Notes under the pieces: generated by a model | Told to the model about the DNA's origin: nothing | The model's database searches: none | The model's input: only the letters and a program-made list of their open reading frames with translations | Shown: piece after piece, positions 93 through 64,000 of the stretch | Layout of the letters: the number at the start of each line of letters is the position of its first letter | How positions within the stretch are numbered: the first letter of the stretch is position 1 | Origin: Hemiscyllium ocellatum | Lineage: Eukaryota | DNA length: 64,000 nucleotides | Assembly (NCBI RefSeq): GCF_020745735.1 | Contig: NC_083433.1 | Coordinates: forward strand, 12,721,363-12,785,362 | Direction: 5' to 3' | Position numbers and translations under genes: made by a program

Positions 93-1426
93 CTAGCTGC
101 TGTCCTCCAGTGAGAGCCTGTCAAACAGATACTCTCCCAGCCCATTCTCAGGAGCTCCCAGACGCTTCAGGTTGGTGATGTAGTCTCCAAGTCGCTTGAT
201 GATCTCAACCTCCTCATCCAAATAGTGGGTCTCCAGGAAGTCACACAGCTGGAAGGAAGGTAGAGAGAGTGTCAGATATTACATGAGAAGAGTCAGAATG
301 TGGGAGTGATCAGCTCCTATGCAGCTCATTCTCCGACATTCAGGCGGTTTACAACTAAGCCATTGCTGGGGGTGGGGAGGGAGGAGTTTCACCACATTAG
401 GATCACAGACAAAGGCAGTGGTCAATATGCATAGCAACATCCCATGGTGATTGGACAGTTTGCTGACAAGTACAGAATAAACATCTGACAAGATCCACAG
501 GGTACATCACCAGCATCTCTCCCTTTGCTGCACCAATTTTGCCCCATGGAGTGGCTCTCCAATCTACAACATGGAGAATACAGAGGGACAGTTAGTCAGG
601 GAAGGGAAAACTCCGTTTCAGCCAGATATTGACCAAATGCCAAAGGAGGATTTAGTGTTGTTCCCTCAAGATTCTTAAAGGCTTTGCTAGAAGTGTAGGA
701 TATTCAGAAGTACATTAGTTTACTAAACAGTCAGTTTGTGGCTTTGCGATGATCAGGCCAGTGAGGTGTTGCCCTGAGGGTGTGGCAGTGATGAGAATGA
801 GGAGGTGGTGAAGCTTACATGAGGGTCAGTCTGGGCAGTGGCAAGTTGGTGTAGATCCAGCAAACTCTGGTTCACATTCTTCTCCAGATCCAGGGCAACC
901 TGCATTGCCTGCAGACTGTTACCCCACTCATCCCTCTCTGGCTTCTGAAACATGGAAACAAAGGACAGTTAAGGATCAGAACCACCAGCTGTTCCAGGTT
1001 GCTTTCACCTTGCACATTTGTCAGTGATATTAAAAGGAGCCACAACAGTCAGACAGGTCAATATATTCCTTACCATGGAGTGGAATTTAAAGAATTCGCT
1101 GCTCCGCATGCATCTCCCCTACACAAGGGATTGGAGTCTGGTCTATGGGGCAGATCCCAAGATCAGACTGACAAAACACGACTAGAACTTGAATTCCCAC
1201 ACCCCCTTCAGGATGTGAAAACCCTGTCACTGACGTGAAGCCACATCACGCAAGCTGCCACTCCCCCCAACATTCCCACCTTCACATCCTGGAGGAGGAC
1301 TCTGCCTCCACGCCGATTCTGGAATTTCAGCAGCTTCTCTGCATGTTCCTGCTTCTCCTGGGACTGAGCTTTGAAGAACCGGGAGAAATGGTGCAGGGCA
1401 ACATCATCCCGGTCAAAGTACGACAT
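93..1426 (-). CDS. Ferritin subunit (L/M-type), copy 1, exons 2-4: 1280-1426, 819-944, 93-248. Exon 1 is either the broken copy at 2911-3010 or the intact one at 10744-10845
   Basis: Exons translate to [49 protein letters not shown] / [42 protein letters not shown] / [55 protein letters not shown] boundaries are canonical and match vertebrate ferritin intron positions. Confidence 0.9.
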
Positions 1427-1607
1427 CTGAAAAGAAGAATTTCTATCCTGTTAACACATCACACACAATGACCCAAGTAATCCCAGACTTCTGGGTGATT
1501 CAGTGACAGAATTAAGGGTCTTTACTTGAGCAGTGTTGTTCCTCAGGACAAACTAGCTCAGCTAGCTTCACAACTATGCAGCAACTCTAGGGATAGAAAG
1601 GAGCTAC

Positions 1608-2342
1608 AGTCATAGTCAAAGATGTACAGCATGGAAACAGACCCTCCGGTTCAACCTGTCCATGCCAACCAGATATCTCAACACAATCTAGTCCTACCTG
1701 CCAGCCTGTATTCCACCAAACCCTTCCTATACATATACCCATCCAGATGCCTTTTAAAATGTTCCAATTTTACCCACCTCCACCACTTCCCCAGCAGTTC
1801 ATTCCATACTCGTACCAGCCTCAGCGTGAAAAAAAATGCCCCTTGGGTCTCATCTTTCCCCTCTCACCCTAAACCTGTGCCCTCTAGTTCTGGACTTCCA
1901 GACCCCAGGGAAAAGGCTGTGTATTTATCTGATCCATGCCCATCATGATTTTGTAAACCTCGGACGCTCCAGGGAAAACAGCTGCAGCCTGTTCAGCCTC
2001 TCCTTGTTGCTCAGATCCTCCAACCCTGGCAACATCCTTGTAAATCTTTTCTGAACCCTTTCGAGTTTCACAATATTTTTCCAATAGGAAGGAGACCAGA
2101 ATTGCATGCAATATTCCAACGGTGGCCTACCCAATTTCCTGTACAGCCACATCATGACCTGACTCCTCCCCCCCCACCCCTCCTGTACTCAATACTCCTG
2201 ACTAATAAAGCATACTAAACATCTTCACTATCCTATCTACCTGCAACTCCACTTTCAAGGAGCTATGAACCTGCACTCCAAGGTTTCTTTGGAGAGACAC
2301 ACTCCTTAGGACCTTACCATTAAGGTGTAACAGTCCTGCTAA
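1608..2342 (-). mobile_element. CR1-clade (HER1-like) LINE 3' fragment
   Basis: Decayed ORF2 C-terminus LYRKLGRPPLEYCMQFWSP...LERVQKRFTRMLPGL and tail ...CTGTTTCCATGCTGTACATC..ACTATGAC. Confidence 0.85.
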
Positions 2343-2910
2343 CATTTGAACACCTGCACTGAACACCCTGAGTTCACCTCCTAACCAGTAATATTTAGTC
2401 CTTGCCCAACATTAGAAAAAGAGCGCGATGACCAAAAAAGTGTGAATATATTGTTTTCAAGCTGGGACAGGTGCAAAAACATGAGACACAGACTTTATTC
2501 AGGTTGAAGTACAAACATGTCCTAAAATAGCTCTGTATTGTCTTTGCAGACAGACAAGCATCACATTGGAATCAAAGTTTCCCTGTAGTTAAGGGACAAA
2601 AGGACATTATATTCAGACAGGTGTGAATTTACTTTCAGAGTAAAGGAGGGAGTCTGACAACTGAATAGACTTATTACACTCCATCAGGAAGAGTTTAGAT
2701 AGTGGACACCGCCCACTACTCTTCAGCAAAACATCACCACATCCTTCAGCCAGATTCAGTTATTTTCAGCATCAAATATACTTTAATCATTAAATTAAAT
2801 ACATAGTCACTAAAACAGCTTGGATCTATGTAGGAACATAGAACAAAAACAAACAAACACTGGAGCTTGAATCTTTTGGATAGAGTCAGTCTTAACCCCA
2901 CAGAGACTCC

Positions 2911-63000: not shown

Positions 63001-63743
63001 ATCCAGGTCATGTTAGAGCTCCATTGGGAGTTATACCAGACAGGTTGAGATCATATCCTTCCCAGGTTAGCTGGTTCCTCCATACAGCCCAATAGACCTT
63101 ACCCAAGGCCAGCAGGAATAGGTGAACAGATCAGGTCACCCAGATCATGCAGTTTGACTCCAAATTGTGGAGTACTTCTAAACACATTGATGTTGGGGGT
63201 GAACTCTTCATGGGCAAACCTGGAAGTGAACATGGAATCAAAGATGTGGGGCATCTAGGGAAATTGATCTCTCAAGTTGATCTTTTGAAGAGGAACACAC
63301 ACTTCCTTGCACACGGTTTGATATAACGCACAACTGTAGGCATTGAGCCAGAAGAGTATAATTCTTGGACAAAAGAATCATTAGATGGAGTATAAAACCT
63401 GAGTGTAAAACATTCTGGGGAGGATAGCTTGCATTTTAGTTACAACAACTCCATCTAGTTATTCCTGTCCAATGGGGTGTGGAGTGTTGGCCGAGGGGAA
63501 AGAGTGATGAGGATACATTTAGTGAGGTGTTTTAGTCCGGTATATGAGCCAAATTGCAGAGTGATTTACTGGCATCAAGCTCTCCAGAAATCAGCAAGTA
63601 CAAGGTTTTATTCATTTCCATTCAGGTGGTACAGCCATTACATTCTTGCCAACATGCTCCTTCTCCCTGGGTGGGGGAAGCCAGATTGTCCAAGTGAAGT
63701 CAGTAATGCATTCAGACAAAAGCAGACAGTCCCCCATGTCCCA

Positions 63744-63897
63744 CTAACTGCTGTCCTCCAGTGAGAGCCTGTCAAACAGGTACTCTCCCAGCCCATTCTC
63801 AGCAGCTCCCAGATGCTTCAGGTTGGTGATGTAGTCCCCAGGTTGTTTGATTATCTCAATCTCCTCATCCAAGTAGTGGGTCTCCAGGAAGTCACAG
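63744..63897 (-). pseudogene. Ferritin copy 8, exon 4 only (rest lies beyond the window), frameshifted
   Basis: Exon is 154 nt instead of 156. A 2-nt deletion in CTGTGTGAC gives CTG TGA. Further changes in the ancestral frame ([17 protein letters not shown]). Confidence 0.85.
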
Positions 63898-64000
63898 CTG
63901 GAACACAGGAATAGCACAACATTACATTAGCACAATCCAAGACAGTTTGGAGAATTCCAACTGCAAAATACACTGGGCAGTACTAGCTCTGGACAACCCC

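What the first reader, a model, noticed from the sequence alone, without database searches (positions are those of the whole stretch)
93..64000. Amplified tandem cluster of at least 8 atypical ferritin genes in a shark-like genome
Seen in sequence: eight head-to-tail, intron-containing ferritin units plus an extra promoter/exon 1. Four are fully intact and nearly identical in protein, and the array runs off the window. Established: vertebrate cytosolic ferritin subunits are usually encoded by one or a few genes under IRE/IRP translational control. Inference: dosage amplification, together with an altered catalytic site and no IRE, points to a bulk-expressed ferritin co-opted for a specialised role. 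Candidates are a tissue-specific nanocage or structural protein, iron withholding, or oocyte/epithelial protection. The actual function cannot be read from the sequence.
Basis: partly seen in the sequence, partly recalled or inferred. Interest (0 to 1): 0.85.

Follow-up and report, generated by a model that had tools for sequence, protein, structure and literature searches.

The report
Amplified atypical ferritin array in shark
This stretch of a bamboo-shark-like genome is a real head-to-tail array of ferritin (iron-storage) genes from a shark-only subfamily that has lost one key catalytic residue and its iron-sensing RNA switch. Giant ferritin arrays of this kind, switched on in the ovary, have already been reported for other sharks.

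Summary
On the minus strand the window holds nine ferritin units, mostly spaced about 8.7-9.3 kb apart. Four are intact 4-exon genes (U2, U3, U4, U7; 176 aa; 96-98% identical). One has a nonsense codon (U6), one lacks exon 1 (U5), and one has a broken exon 1 (U9). There is also an orphan promoter plus exon 1 (U8) and a frameshifted exon 4 at the window edge (U1). All copies carry E62K and Q141E. None has an IRE, whereas transcripts of the canonical shark H ferritin score 42 bits for IRE_I. Intact copies are under purifying selection (dN/dS 0.2-0.4).

The proteins are 96-98% identical to RefSeq "ferritin, middle subunit-like" of Chiloscyllium. They belong to a well-supported K62 clade present in hexanchiform, carcharhiniform, lamniform and orectolobiform sharks. 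Its sister clade is also amplified but keeps an intact ferroxidase site.

The phenomenon is not new. The Greenland shark genome preprint (10.1101/2024.09.09.611499) reports 155 FTL plus 179 FTH1 copies in conserved clusters with ovary-specific expression. Earlier first-reader notes of this scan (unchecked) flag more ferritin arrays in this genome.

Possibly new details are the independent L-like E62K subunit, the contrast in IRE presence, and homogenisation limited to exons. Function is inferred: an IRP-independent maternal or oocyte ferritin supply.

The parts
93..3010 (-). U9. Exons 2-4 are intact (e4 93-248, e3 819-944, e2 1280-1426). Its own exon 1 (2909-3010) has a 2-nt deletion and a destroyed GT donor. 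Introns are short (1482/335/570 bp) and do not align with those of the other units.
10744..11100 (-). U8. Orphan promoter (CCAAT, TGATGTCAT and TATAAATAA motifs) plus an intact exon 1 (10744-10845) with a GT donor. No exons 2-4 of its own were found.
14340..19720 (-). U7, an intact gene. e1 19510-19611, e2 16109-16255, e3 15297-15422, e4 14473-14628. AATAAA lies about 133 nt after the stop codon.
23747..28705 (-). U6, a pseudogene. All four exons are present, but TGA at 23897-23899 (codon 2 of exon 4) stops the frame, and there are several radical replacements.
32580..34342 (-). U5, a truncated unit with exons 2-4 only. Promoter, exon 1 and about 3.7 kb are missing, and the spacing to U4 is only about 5.0 kb.
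37450..42550 (-). U4, an intact gene. e1 42342-42443, e2 39212-39358, e3 38408-38533, e4 37581-37736.
46180..51325 (-). U3, an intact gene used as the reference. e1 51115-51216, e2 47941-48087, e3 47136-47261, e4 46312-46467. A TATA box lies about 100 nt upstream of the ATG, and AATAAA about 132 nt after the stop.
54970..59955 (-). U2, an intact gene. e1 59745-59846, e2 56723-56869, e3 55925-56050, e4 55105-55260.
63744..64000 (-). U1. Exon 4 (63744-63899) has a 2-nt deletion just after the acceptor, giving CTG-TGA, and five amino-acid changes. Exons 1-3 lie beyond the window end.

Best explanation
Shown: the window is a segment of a large, genuine tandem array of a shark-specific cytosolic ferritin subfamily, called here the K62 type (RefSeq name 'ferritin, middle/heavy subunit-like'). 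Each unit is a classic 4-exon vertebrate ferritin gene. It has a TATA/CCAAT promoter that is not a CpG island, a leader of about 90 nt without an IRE, and a poly(A) signal. The array grows and decays by unequal crossing-over, which explains the truncated U5, the orphan U8 and the pseudogenes U1, U6 and U9. Short gene-conversion tracts centred on the exons keep the coding sequences 95-100% alike, even where introns no longer align.

The protein keeps the 3-fold channel residues (D131, E134) and most ferroxidase ligands (E27, Y34, E61, H65, E107). It replaces the bridging ligand E62 with Lys, a change fixed in the representative K62-clade proteins examined from eight shark species. In orectolobiforms it also replaces Q141 with Glu.

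Inferred: the subunit is ferroxidase-impaired and acts as an L-like shell-building partner that evolved independently of tetrapod L. It probably co-assembles with the sister amplified family, which keeps an intact ferroxidase site. Having many copies and no IRE allows massive translation that does not depend on IRP. The most likely site is the ovary or oocyte, as published for the ferritin clusters in the Greenland shark. The purpose would be to stock large yolky eggs with ferritin and iron and to buffer iron-driven oxidation.
For: Array and gene models. Ferritin identity: Pfam PF00210 on the exons; an ungapped 1-176 alignment of the close homologue P0163 to frog M ferritin at E 7e-84. E62K and Q141E against the retained ligands. 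The K62 clade is monophyletic (SH-aLRT 100) across Heptranchias, Mustelus, Cetorhinus, Carcharodon, Stegostoma, Hemiscyllium and Chiloscyllium, and is sister to a second amplified clade with E62/H65/Q141. Purifying selection: dN/dS 0.21-0.38, and 13 nonsynonymous versus 11 synonymous variable sites against a neutral expectation of 79% nonsynonymous, p=0.0065. No IRE in seven leaders, while canonical shark H ferritin transcripts carry IRE_I at 42-42.6 bits. Promoter motifs are conserved even in the diverged U8 and U9, and CpG o/e is 0.11-0.24. An independent chromosome-level assembly of C. punctatum has the homologous 5.5-kb gene flanked by same-strand ferritin genes about 9.4 kb apart (start to start), and the 90%-identity protein clusters hold 19-76 distinct sequences. 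Exon-limited similarity of U9: exons 97-98% identical (dS 0.05-0.07) against introns 35-49% different. Literature: 155 FTL plus 179 FTH1 copies, clusters syntenic between Greenland and great white shark, ovary-specific expression. E62K with H65G (and K86Q) is the standard ferroxidase-null human H mutant. Snail yolk ferritin also lacks an IRE.
Against: No expression data for this species or for these copies could be examined. No K62-type protein appeared among transcript-like short contigs (ENA/Logan) in two database searches. It is not shown that the preprint's 'FTL' copies are the K62 clade. E62K alone, with H65 and E27 kept, may leave residual ferroxidase activity, since the published null mutant also carries H65G. 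Co-assembly with the E62-type family is pure inference. About half of the units in this window are defective, so part of the array is decaying. An upstream non-coding exon carrying an IRE cannot be formally excluded without transcripts, although none was found anywhere in the 64 kb.
Confidence: 0.6

Rival explanations
1. The amplified ferritin is a broadly expressed somatic stress protein. It would raise tolerance to reactive oxygen species, hypoxia/reoxygenation or infection (iron withholding), and would not be a maternal or oocyte store.
For: A tandem expansion of a ferritin H-like gene (14 copies) in the hadal snailfish is highly expressed in most tissues and raises ROS tolerance. Hemiscylliid sharks are known hypoxia-tolerant animals (own knowledge). 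Losing the IRE would also suit constitutive somatic expression.
Against: The only expression data for shark ferritin clusters report ovary-specific expression. The promoters are TATA-type and lack a CpG island, which is typical of tissue-restricted genes. The K62 clade is shared by sharks with very different ecologies. No K62-type protein was seen among transcript-like short contigs, while the canonical H ferritin was.
Confidence: 0.2
2. The array is mostly an evolutionary by-product. Runaway unequal crossing-over would have left largely silent or redundant copies drifting toward pseudogenes, with no dosage function.
For: Five of the nine units in the window are defective. The E62-type array fetched from C. 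punctatum also shows stop codons in its exon 1 copies.
Against: Intact copies show dN/dS of 0.2-0.4 and a significant deficit of nonsynonymous sites. The pseudogene U6 shows higher ratios (0.32-0.54 against the four intact copies over the full CDS). E62K and about 80% protein identity are conserved across shark orders. Promoter motifs are conserved in diverged units. Expression of the clusters has been published.
Confidence: 0.12
3. The copy number is an assembly artefact, caused by over-expansion of a collapsed or mis-assembled repeat.
For: Tandem repeats of 9 kb are hard to assemble, and the window alone gives no read-depth information.
Against: The units differ by about 10% in non-coding DNA and carry unit-specific lesions and indels, so they are not duplicated reads of one copy. 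An independent assembly and annotation of C. punctatum shows the same spacing. Dozens of distinct protein variants exist per species. Two other shark genomes show the same expansion.
Confidence: 0.03

Closest known systems
Shark ferritin mega-clusters reported in the Greenland shark genome preprint (Sahm et al., bioRxiv 10.1101/2024.09.09.611499)
   Same: Both are tandem clusters of full-length, intron-containing ferritin genes numbering in the hundreds per genome and conserved between distant sharks. The preprint reports ovary-specific expression of the largest cluster.
   Different: The species is different (hemiscylliid-like). The preprint labels copies only as 'FTL' or 'FTH1'. In the text I read, it does not describe the E62K/Q141E site, the missing IRE, or the exon-limited homogenisation. 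Whether its 'FTL' equals the K62 clade is untested.
RefSeq 'ferritin, middle subunit-like / heavy subunit-like' of Chiloscyllium punctatum, C. plagiosum, Hemiscyllium ocellatum and Stegostoma tigrinum (e.g. XP_072444278.1)
   Same: They are 93-98% identical 176-aa proteins with the same K62/E141 residues. The gene span (about 5.5 kb) and the tandem spacing (about 9.4 kb) also match.
   Different: None of the 15 listed cluster members is identical to a window protein (2-7 differences), so the exact species or copy is not pinned down.
Tetrapod L (light-chain) ferritin
   Same: Both have Lys at position 62 in place of the bridging ferroxidase glutamate, which suggests a catalytically impaired subunit meant for heteropolymers.
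   Different: The shark protein keeps E27 and H65 (L has Y27 and G65) and lacks the L nucleation glutamates at 57 and 60 (it has A57 and Q60). It nests among shark H/M-type ferritins at 72-77% identity and has no IRE. It is therefore a convergent L-like form, not an L orthologue. L sequences themselves were not in my tree.
Vertebrate H and M ferritins (frog M ferritin 1MFR/4MJY, human FTH1)
   Same: The fold and length match, with an ungapped full-length alignment. The exon plan is the same, with 147-bp and 126-bp exons 2 and 3. The 3-fold channel residues D131/E134 are kept, as are five of the seven ferroxidase-site residues.
   Different: It has E62K and Q141E, no 5' IRE (canonical shark H has one), and many tandem copies instead of one or a few.
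Gastropod yolk ferritin (Lymnaea, Biomphalaria)
   Same: Both are reproductive ferritins whose mRNA lacks an IRE, so their synthesis is uncoupled from cellular iron.
   Different: Snail yolk ferritin is secreted (it has a signal peptide) and carries a 42-aa insertion. The shark protein has neither. It is also not a tandem mega-array.

Membership tests
Eukaryotic ferritin (Pfam PF00210, 24-mer H/M/L type) | Ferritin-like four-helix-bundle domain over the whole protein | tested here: met
   Each exon translation hits PF00210 in the correct profile order (positions 2-20, 24-66, 76-113, 114-141). Exon 2 alone matches ferritin chains in the PDB at E 3.5e-18. The 96.6%-identical homologue P0163 aligns 1-176 to 1-176 with frog M ferritin at E 7e-84.
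Eukaryotic ferritin (Pfam PF00210, 24-mer H/M/L type) | Conserved vertebrate 4-exon gene plan (phase-0 introns; exon 2 = 147 bp, exon 3 = 126 bp) | tested here: met
   The exons are 102 (coding part), 147, 126 and 156 bp with AG/GT boundaries in all intact units. The comparison with human FTH1 exon sizes rests on established knowledge.
Catalytic H/M-type ferritin | Complete di-iron ferroxidase centre (E27, Y34, E61, E62, H65, E107, Q141) | tested here: not met
   All window copies and all orectolobiform homologues have K62 and E141. The other five residues are kept.
Catalytic H/M-type ferritin | IRE in the 5' UTR (IRP translational control) | tested here: not met
   Rfam found no IRE_I at the gathering threshold in 64 kb, none at E<=10 in the U3 leader, and no C-bulge/CAGUGN stem-loop in the seven leaders. 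The control, canonical shark H transcripts L002-L005, scored 42-42.6 bits.
Tetrapod L ferritin | K62 together with Y27 and G65, and the nucleation glutamates E57/E60/E61/E64/E67 | tested here: not met
   K62 is present, but E27 and H65 are retained and positions 57 and 60 are A and Q. The L residues used for comparison come from established knowledge, not from a sequence fetched here.
Tetrapod L ferritin | Phylogenetic grouping with L chains | not tested
   No L-chain sequence was available as a tool-given id. The K62 clade nests with shark H/M-like clades, with SH-aLRT 100 for the clade itself and 86 for its sister relation to the second amplified shark clade.
Shark amplified ferritin clusters (Greenland and great white shark) | Many tandem full-length copies in clusters, conserved across shark lineages | tested here: met
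   There are nine units in 64 kb. Homologues occur in eight shark species as multi-member clusters. A tandem arrangement is seen in C. punctatum. Unchecked notes of this scan place further arrays on both sides of the window and about 6 Mb away.
Shark amplified ferritin clusters (Greenland and great white shark) | Ovary-specific expression | not testable with these tools
   Known only from the preprint's statement. No RNA-seq could be mapped here.
Gastropod yolk ferritin | Signal peptide and 42-aa insertion | tested here: not met
   The N-terminus aligns residue for residue with cytosolic ferritins, with no leader and no insertion.

The most novel reading that the evidence does not exclude
Sharks independently invented a two-subunit ferritin system dedicated to the germ line. 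One subunit is a ferroxidase-dead, IRE-less K62 type that is convergent with tetrapod L. The other is a catalytically competent sister family. Both would be amplified to tens or hundreds of tandem copies, kept uniform by exon-targeted gene conversion, and co-assembled in oocytes as an IRP-independent maternal iron store and antioxidant buffer.
Probability: 0.3. Interest if true: 0.7.

Novelty: new member of a known kind. Interest (0 to 1): 0.45.

Why it matters
The textbook picture of ferritin is one or a few genes under IRE/IRP control. Sharks break both rules on a massive scale. This window shows what one of the two amplified families looks like in detail. It is an old (shark-wide), selectively maintained subunit whose bridging ferroxidase ligand is replaced by lysine, as in mammalian L chains, but it arose separately. 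It has lost the IRE that the canonical shark H ferritin still carries. If the ovary expression holds, this is a vertebrate example of meeting a huge maternal protein demand through gene dosage, as in oocyte 5S rRNA or histone arrays, and a natural experiment in the division of labour between H-like and L-like subunits. The array also gives a clean case of exon-limited concerted evolution.

Tried and rejected
- The spliced 176-aa protein cannot be given to the tools by reference. I therefore searched exon pieces and used the 96.6%-identical RefSeq homologue P0163 as a proxy.
- DNA of the chromosome-level shark assemblies could not be fetched because the files are too large. Only gene tables were obtained, so dN/dS between species and IRE checks in other sharks' K62 genes were not possible.
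- The draft C. punctatum contig L001 is one-third gaps and matched the window only at exons, so it did not settle the species.
- The eight longest non-ferritin ORFs in the intergenic and intron DNA had no Pfam hit. Rfam found no RNA family in the window, and TRF found only a (GT)27 microsatellite.
- I looked for transcript-like short contigs encoding K62-type proteins as expression evidence and found none.
- A words search of earlier scan notes for ovary or oocyte returned nothing.
- I did not predict a structure. The fold is not in doubt, and the tool returns no coordinates for measuring K62-E107/E141 distances.
- Literature searches for shark ferritin L-like subunits, Chiloscyllium ferritin and shark oocyte ferritin found nothing beyond the Greenland shark preprint.
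Full report
**What is in the window.** The sequence has vertebrate-like composition (45% G+C, CpG observed/expected 0.13, no gaps). A self-comparison shows direct repeats at about 90% identity, mostly at offsets of 8.6-9.3 kb, from about 12.7 kb to the window end. A more diverged part lies at 1-12.7 kb. 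Six-frame motif scans, then blastn and tblastn with the exons of one unit, place ferritin exons on the minus strand throughout.

**Gene models.**
- Four units are complete: U2 (CDS 55105-59846), U3 (46312-51216), U4 (37581-42443) and U7 (14473-19611).
- Their exons are 102, 147, 126 and 156 bp. All introns are phase 0 with AG/GT boundaries, and intron lengths are about 3.0, 0.68 and 0.67 kb.
- Each encodes a 176-aa ORF. The four proteins differ at 4-7 positions (96.0-97.7% identity).
- U6 has TGT>TGA at the second codon of exon 4.
- U1, at the right edge, has a 2-nt deletion at the same CTGTGTGAC spot, giving CTG-TGA.
- U5 lacks the promoter and exon 1 and sits only about 5.0 kb from U4.
- U8 is a promoter plus an intact exon 1 with no exons 2-4.
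- U9 has intact exons 2-4 but a 2-nt deletion and a lost donor in exon 1.

**Gene furniture.**
- Upstream of each ATG lie two inverted CCAAT boxes, a TGATGTCAT element and a TATAAATAA box. These are conserved even in the 70-79%-identical U8 and U9 promoters.
- There is no CpG island (G+C 0.37-0.38, CpG o/e 0.11-0.24).
- AATAAA lies about 132 nt after the stop codon.
- The predicted mRNA is therefore short, about 0.8 kb, with a leader of about 90 nt.

**Ferritin identity and the altered site.**
- The four exon translations hit Pfam PF00210 in the correct profile order.
- Exon 2 alone matches fish, frog and human ferritin chains at E about 1e-17.
- The RefSeq homologue P0163, 96.6% identical to U3, aligns without gaps over 1-176 with frog M ferritin at E 7e-84.
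- In human H numbering, the window proteins keep E27, Y34, E61, H65 and E107, and the 3-fold channel residues D131 and E134.
- They have K at 62 and E at 141. Positions 57 and 60 are A and Q.
- E62 is the carboxylate that bridges the two irons. E62K combined with H65G (and K86Q) is the standard ferroxidase-null human H mutant (PMC4029007).
- Tetrapod L chains also carry K62 (established knowledge).
- The subunit is therefore neither a normal H/M nor a classical L. I infer, but have not shown, that its ferroxidase activity is strongly reduced.

**No IRE, with a control.**
- Rfam at the gathering threshold finds nothing in the 64 kb.
- A permissive search (E<=10) of the U3 leader finds no IRE.
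- A direct scan for a C-bulge, 5-bp stem and CAGUGN loop finds nothing in any of the seven leaders.
- As a positive control, four intronless, transcript-like contigs carry IRE_I at 42-42.6 bits (gathering score 34) about 60-90 nt upstream of the ATG. Three encode the canonical H ferritin of C. plagiosum (protein P0187) and one a catshark-like H ferritin (P0212).
- So sharks keep IRE control on the canonical H gene, and the amplified family has lost it.
- A fetched C. punctatum contig with an array of the other amplified family also has no IRE, although its exon 1 copies carry stop codons.

**Selection and concerted evolution.**
- Among the four intact copies, pairwise dN/dS is 0.21-0.38, with dS about 0.05-0.06.
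- They differ at 13 nonsynonymous and 11 synonymous sites, against a neutral expectation of 79% nonsynonymous (binomial p=0.0065).
- The pseudogene U6 gives higher ratios (0.32-0.54 against the four intact copies over the full CDS).
- Introns 2 and 3 differ by 3-9% among U2-U7.
- U9 is striking. Its exons 2-4 are 97-98% identical to the others (dS 0.05-0.07), but its introns are 35-49% different and have other lengths.
- In U9 the similarity ends 6-92 nt beyond each exon boundary, including right after the stop codon.
- The C. punctatum draft contig L001 shows the same exon-only similarity.
- Because the tracts extend a little into the introns, short DNA-level gene conversion seeded in the exons is the likeliest cause (inference).

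**Where it belongs.**
- A library-wide phmmer search with exon 2 gave a Stegostoma model (P0005) as a handle.
- Two homologue searches then returned RefSeq 'ferritin, middle/heavy subunit-like' proteins of Chiloscyllium punctatum, C. plagiosum, Hemiscyllium ocellatum and Stegostoma tigrinum at 93-98% identity.
- The 90%-identity clusters hold 19-76 distinct sequences.
- The window therefore comes from a hemiscylliid, bamboo-shark-like genome. No listed protein is identical to a window protein, so I cannot name the species.
- In the C. punctatum chromosome assembly, the P0163 gene spans 5.5 kb and is flanked by same-strand ferritin genes about 9.4 kb apart (start to start).
- In a maximum-likelihood tree of 50 proteins, the K62 proteins form one clade (SH-aLRT 100). 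Its branching follows shark phylogeny: Heptranchias first, then Mustelus, the lamniforms and the orectolobiforms.
- A single Heptranchias K62 sequence falls elsewhere in the tree.
- E62K is present in every K62-clade protein examined. Q141E is limited to orectolobiforms.
- The sister group (support 86) is a second shark family with an intact ferroxidase site and even larger clusters (127-180 members).
- The canonical chondrichthyan H ferritins form a separate clade.
- E62K is thus old, predating the split of squalomorph and galeomorph sharks, and it is maintained.

**Prior knowledge.**
- The Greenland shark genome preprint (10.1101/2024.09.09.611499) reports 155 FTL and 179 FTH1 copies.
- About 80% of these lie in three clusters that are syntenic with the great white shark. 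More than 85% are full length.
- RNA-seq shows ovary-specific expression of the largest cluster.
- The amplification is therefore already known, and the genes are already annotated in RefSeq.
- I found no description of the K62 clade, its missing IRE or its exon-limited homogenisation.
- First-reader notes of this scan (unchecked) say the array continues on both sides of this window and that further ferritin arrays lie about 6 Mb away.

**Best reading.**
- Shown: a real, partly decaying tandem array of an ancient, selectively maintained, IRE-less ferritin subfamily with E62K.
- Inferred: the subunit is L-like in function and co-assembles with the catalytically intact sister family.
- Inferred: high copy number and freedom from IRP repression serve bulk synthesis in the ovary or oocyte for large yolky eggs.
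- Snail yolk ferritin offers a precedent for an IRE-less reproductive ferritin (PMC10799875), though it is secreted and this protein is not.
- Rivals are a somatic antioxidant or hypoxia role, as in the hadal snailfish expansion (PMC10746142); a largely functionless by-product of unequal crossing-over; and an assembly artefact. The last is very unlikely given the unit-specific differences and the independent assemblies.

**Verdict.** This is a new member, in a further shark lineage, of an already reported phenomenon, with some undescribed molecular detail. Interest is moderate.

Noticed in passing
window 93-10845 (U8 exon 1 at 10744-10845; U9 exons 2-4 at 93-1426): U9's own exon 1 is dead (2-nt deletion, GT donor lost). 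The orphan U8 exon 1, 7.7 kb upstream, is intact and has a TATA promoter and a GT donor. Splicing U8 exon 1 to U9 exon 2 would give an uninterrupted 176-aa ferritin ORF, a possible fifth working gene.
   Followed up: partly
window 87-254, 758-984, 1188-1462 compared with U3 at 46306-48124: Homogenisation is limited to the exons. U9 exons 2-4 are 97-98% identical to the other units, and similarity stops 6-92 nt past each exon edge. The introns and the 3' UTR do not align. The C. punctatum draft contig L001 shows the same pattern.
   Followed up: partly
window 23897-23899 (U6) and about 63895 (U1): Two independent inactivating lesions hit the same short CTGTGTGAC run at the start of exon 4. One is TGT>TGA and the other is loss of one TG, and both create CTG-TGA. 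This may be a slippage-prone hotspot.
   Followed up: no
window 30727-35710 (U5): This is a short unit with about 5.0 kb spacing. The promoter, exon 1 and about 3.7 kb are missing, consistent with unequal crossing-over or a deletion between intron 1 and the intergenic region.
   Followed up: partly
window 3816-3874, 4575-4652, 6666-6742, 10371-10435, 53111-53189: A dispersed element of about 60-80 bp (78-86% identical copies, on both orientations) recurs in the diverged left part and at the unit boundary of the array. It is probably a fragment of a short interspersed repeat.
   Followed up: no
window 21789-21842: A (GT)27 microsatellite lies upstream of the U7 promoter region. It is the only tandem repeat TRF reports in the window.
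   Followed up: no
L002-L005 (ENA metagenome-labelled contigs): These intronless contigs of about 0.9 kb come from samples labelled as metagenomes. They encode canonical shark H ferritin (P0187 is identical to a C. plagiosum RefSeq protein) and carry a textbook 5' IRE. They look like host shark transcripts in 'metagenome' assemblies.
   Followed up: partly
protein P0220 (sequence): A 176-aa protein named 'ferritin [Aeromonas veronii]', on an 866-bp contig, is about 97% identical to a catshark-like canonical H ferritin (P0212). It is almost certainly host (shark or fish) contamination in a bacterial assembly.
   Followed up: no
L006:1-19481 (C. punctatum BEZZ01001957.1): This contig holds a tandem array of the second amplified shark ferritin family (E62/H65/Q141/M144 type). 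The two exon 1 copies seen carry in-frame stop codons, and Rfam finds no IRE.
   Followed up: partly
L001:3353-3424: A tRNA-like match (Rfam tRNA, 48 bits) lies just upstream of a ferritin exon 2 copy in the C. punctatum draft contig. It is probably part of a tRNA-derived SINE.
   Followed up: no
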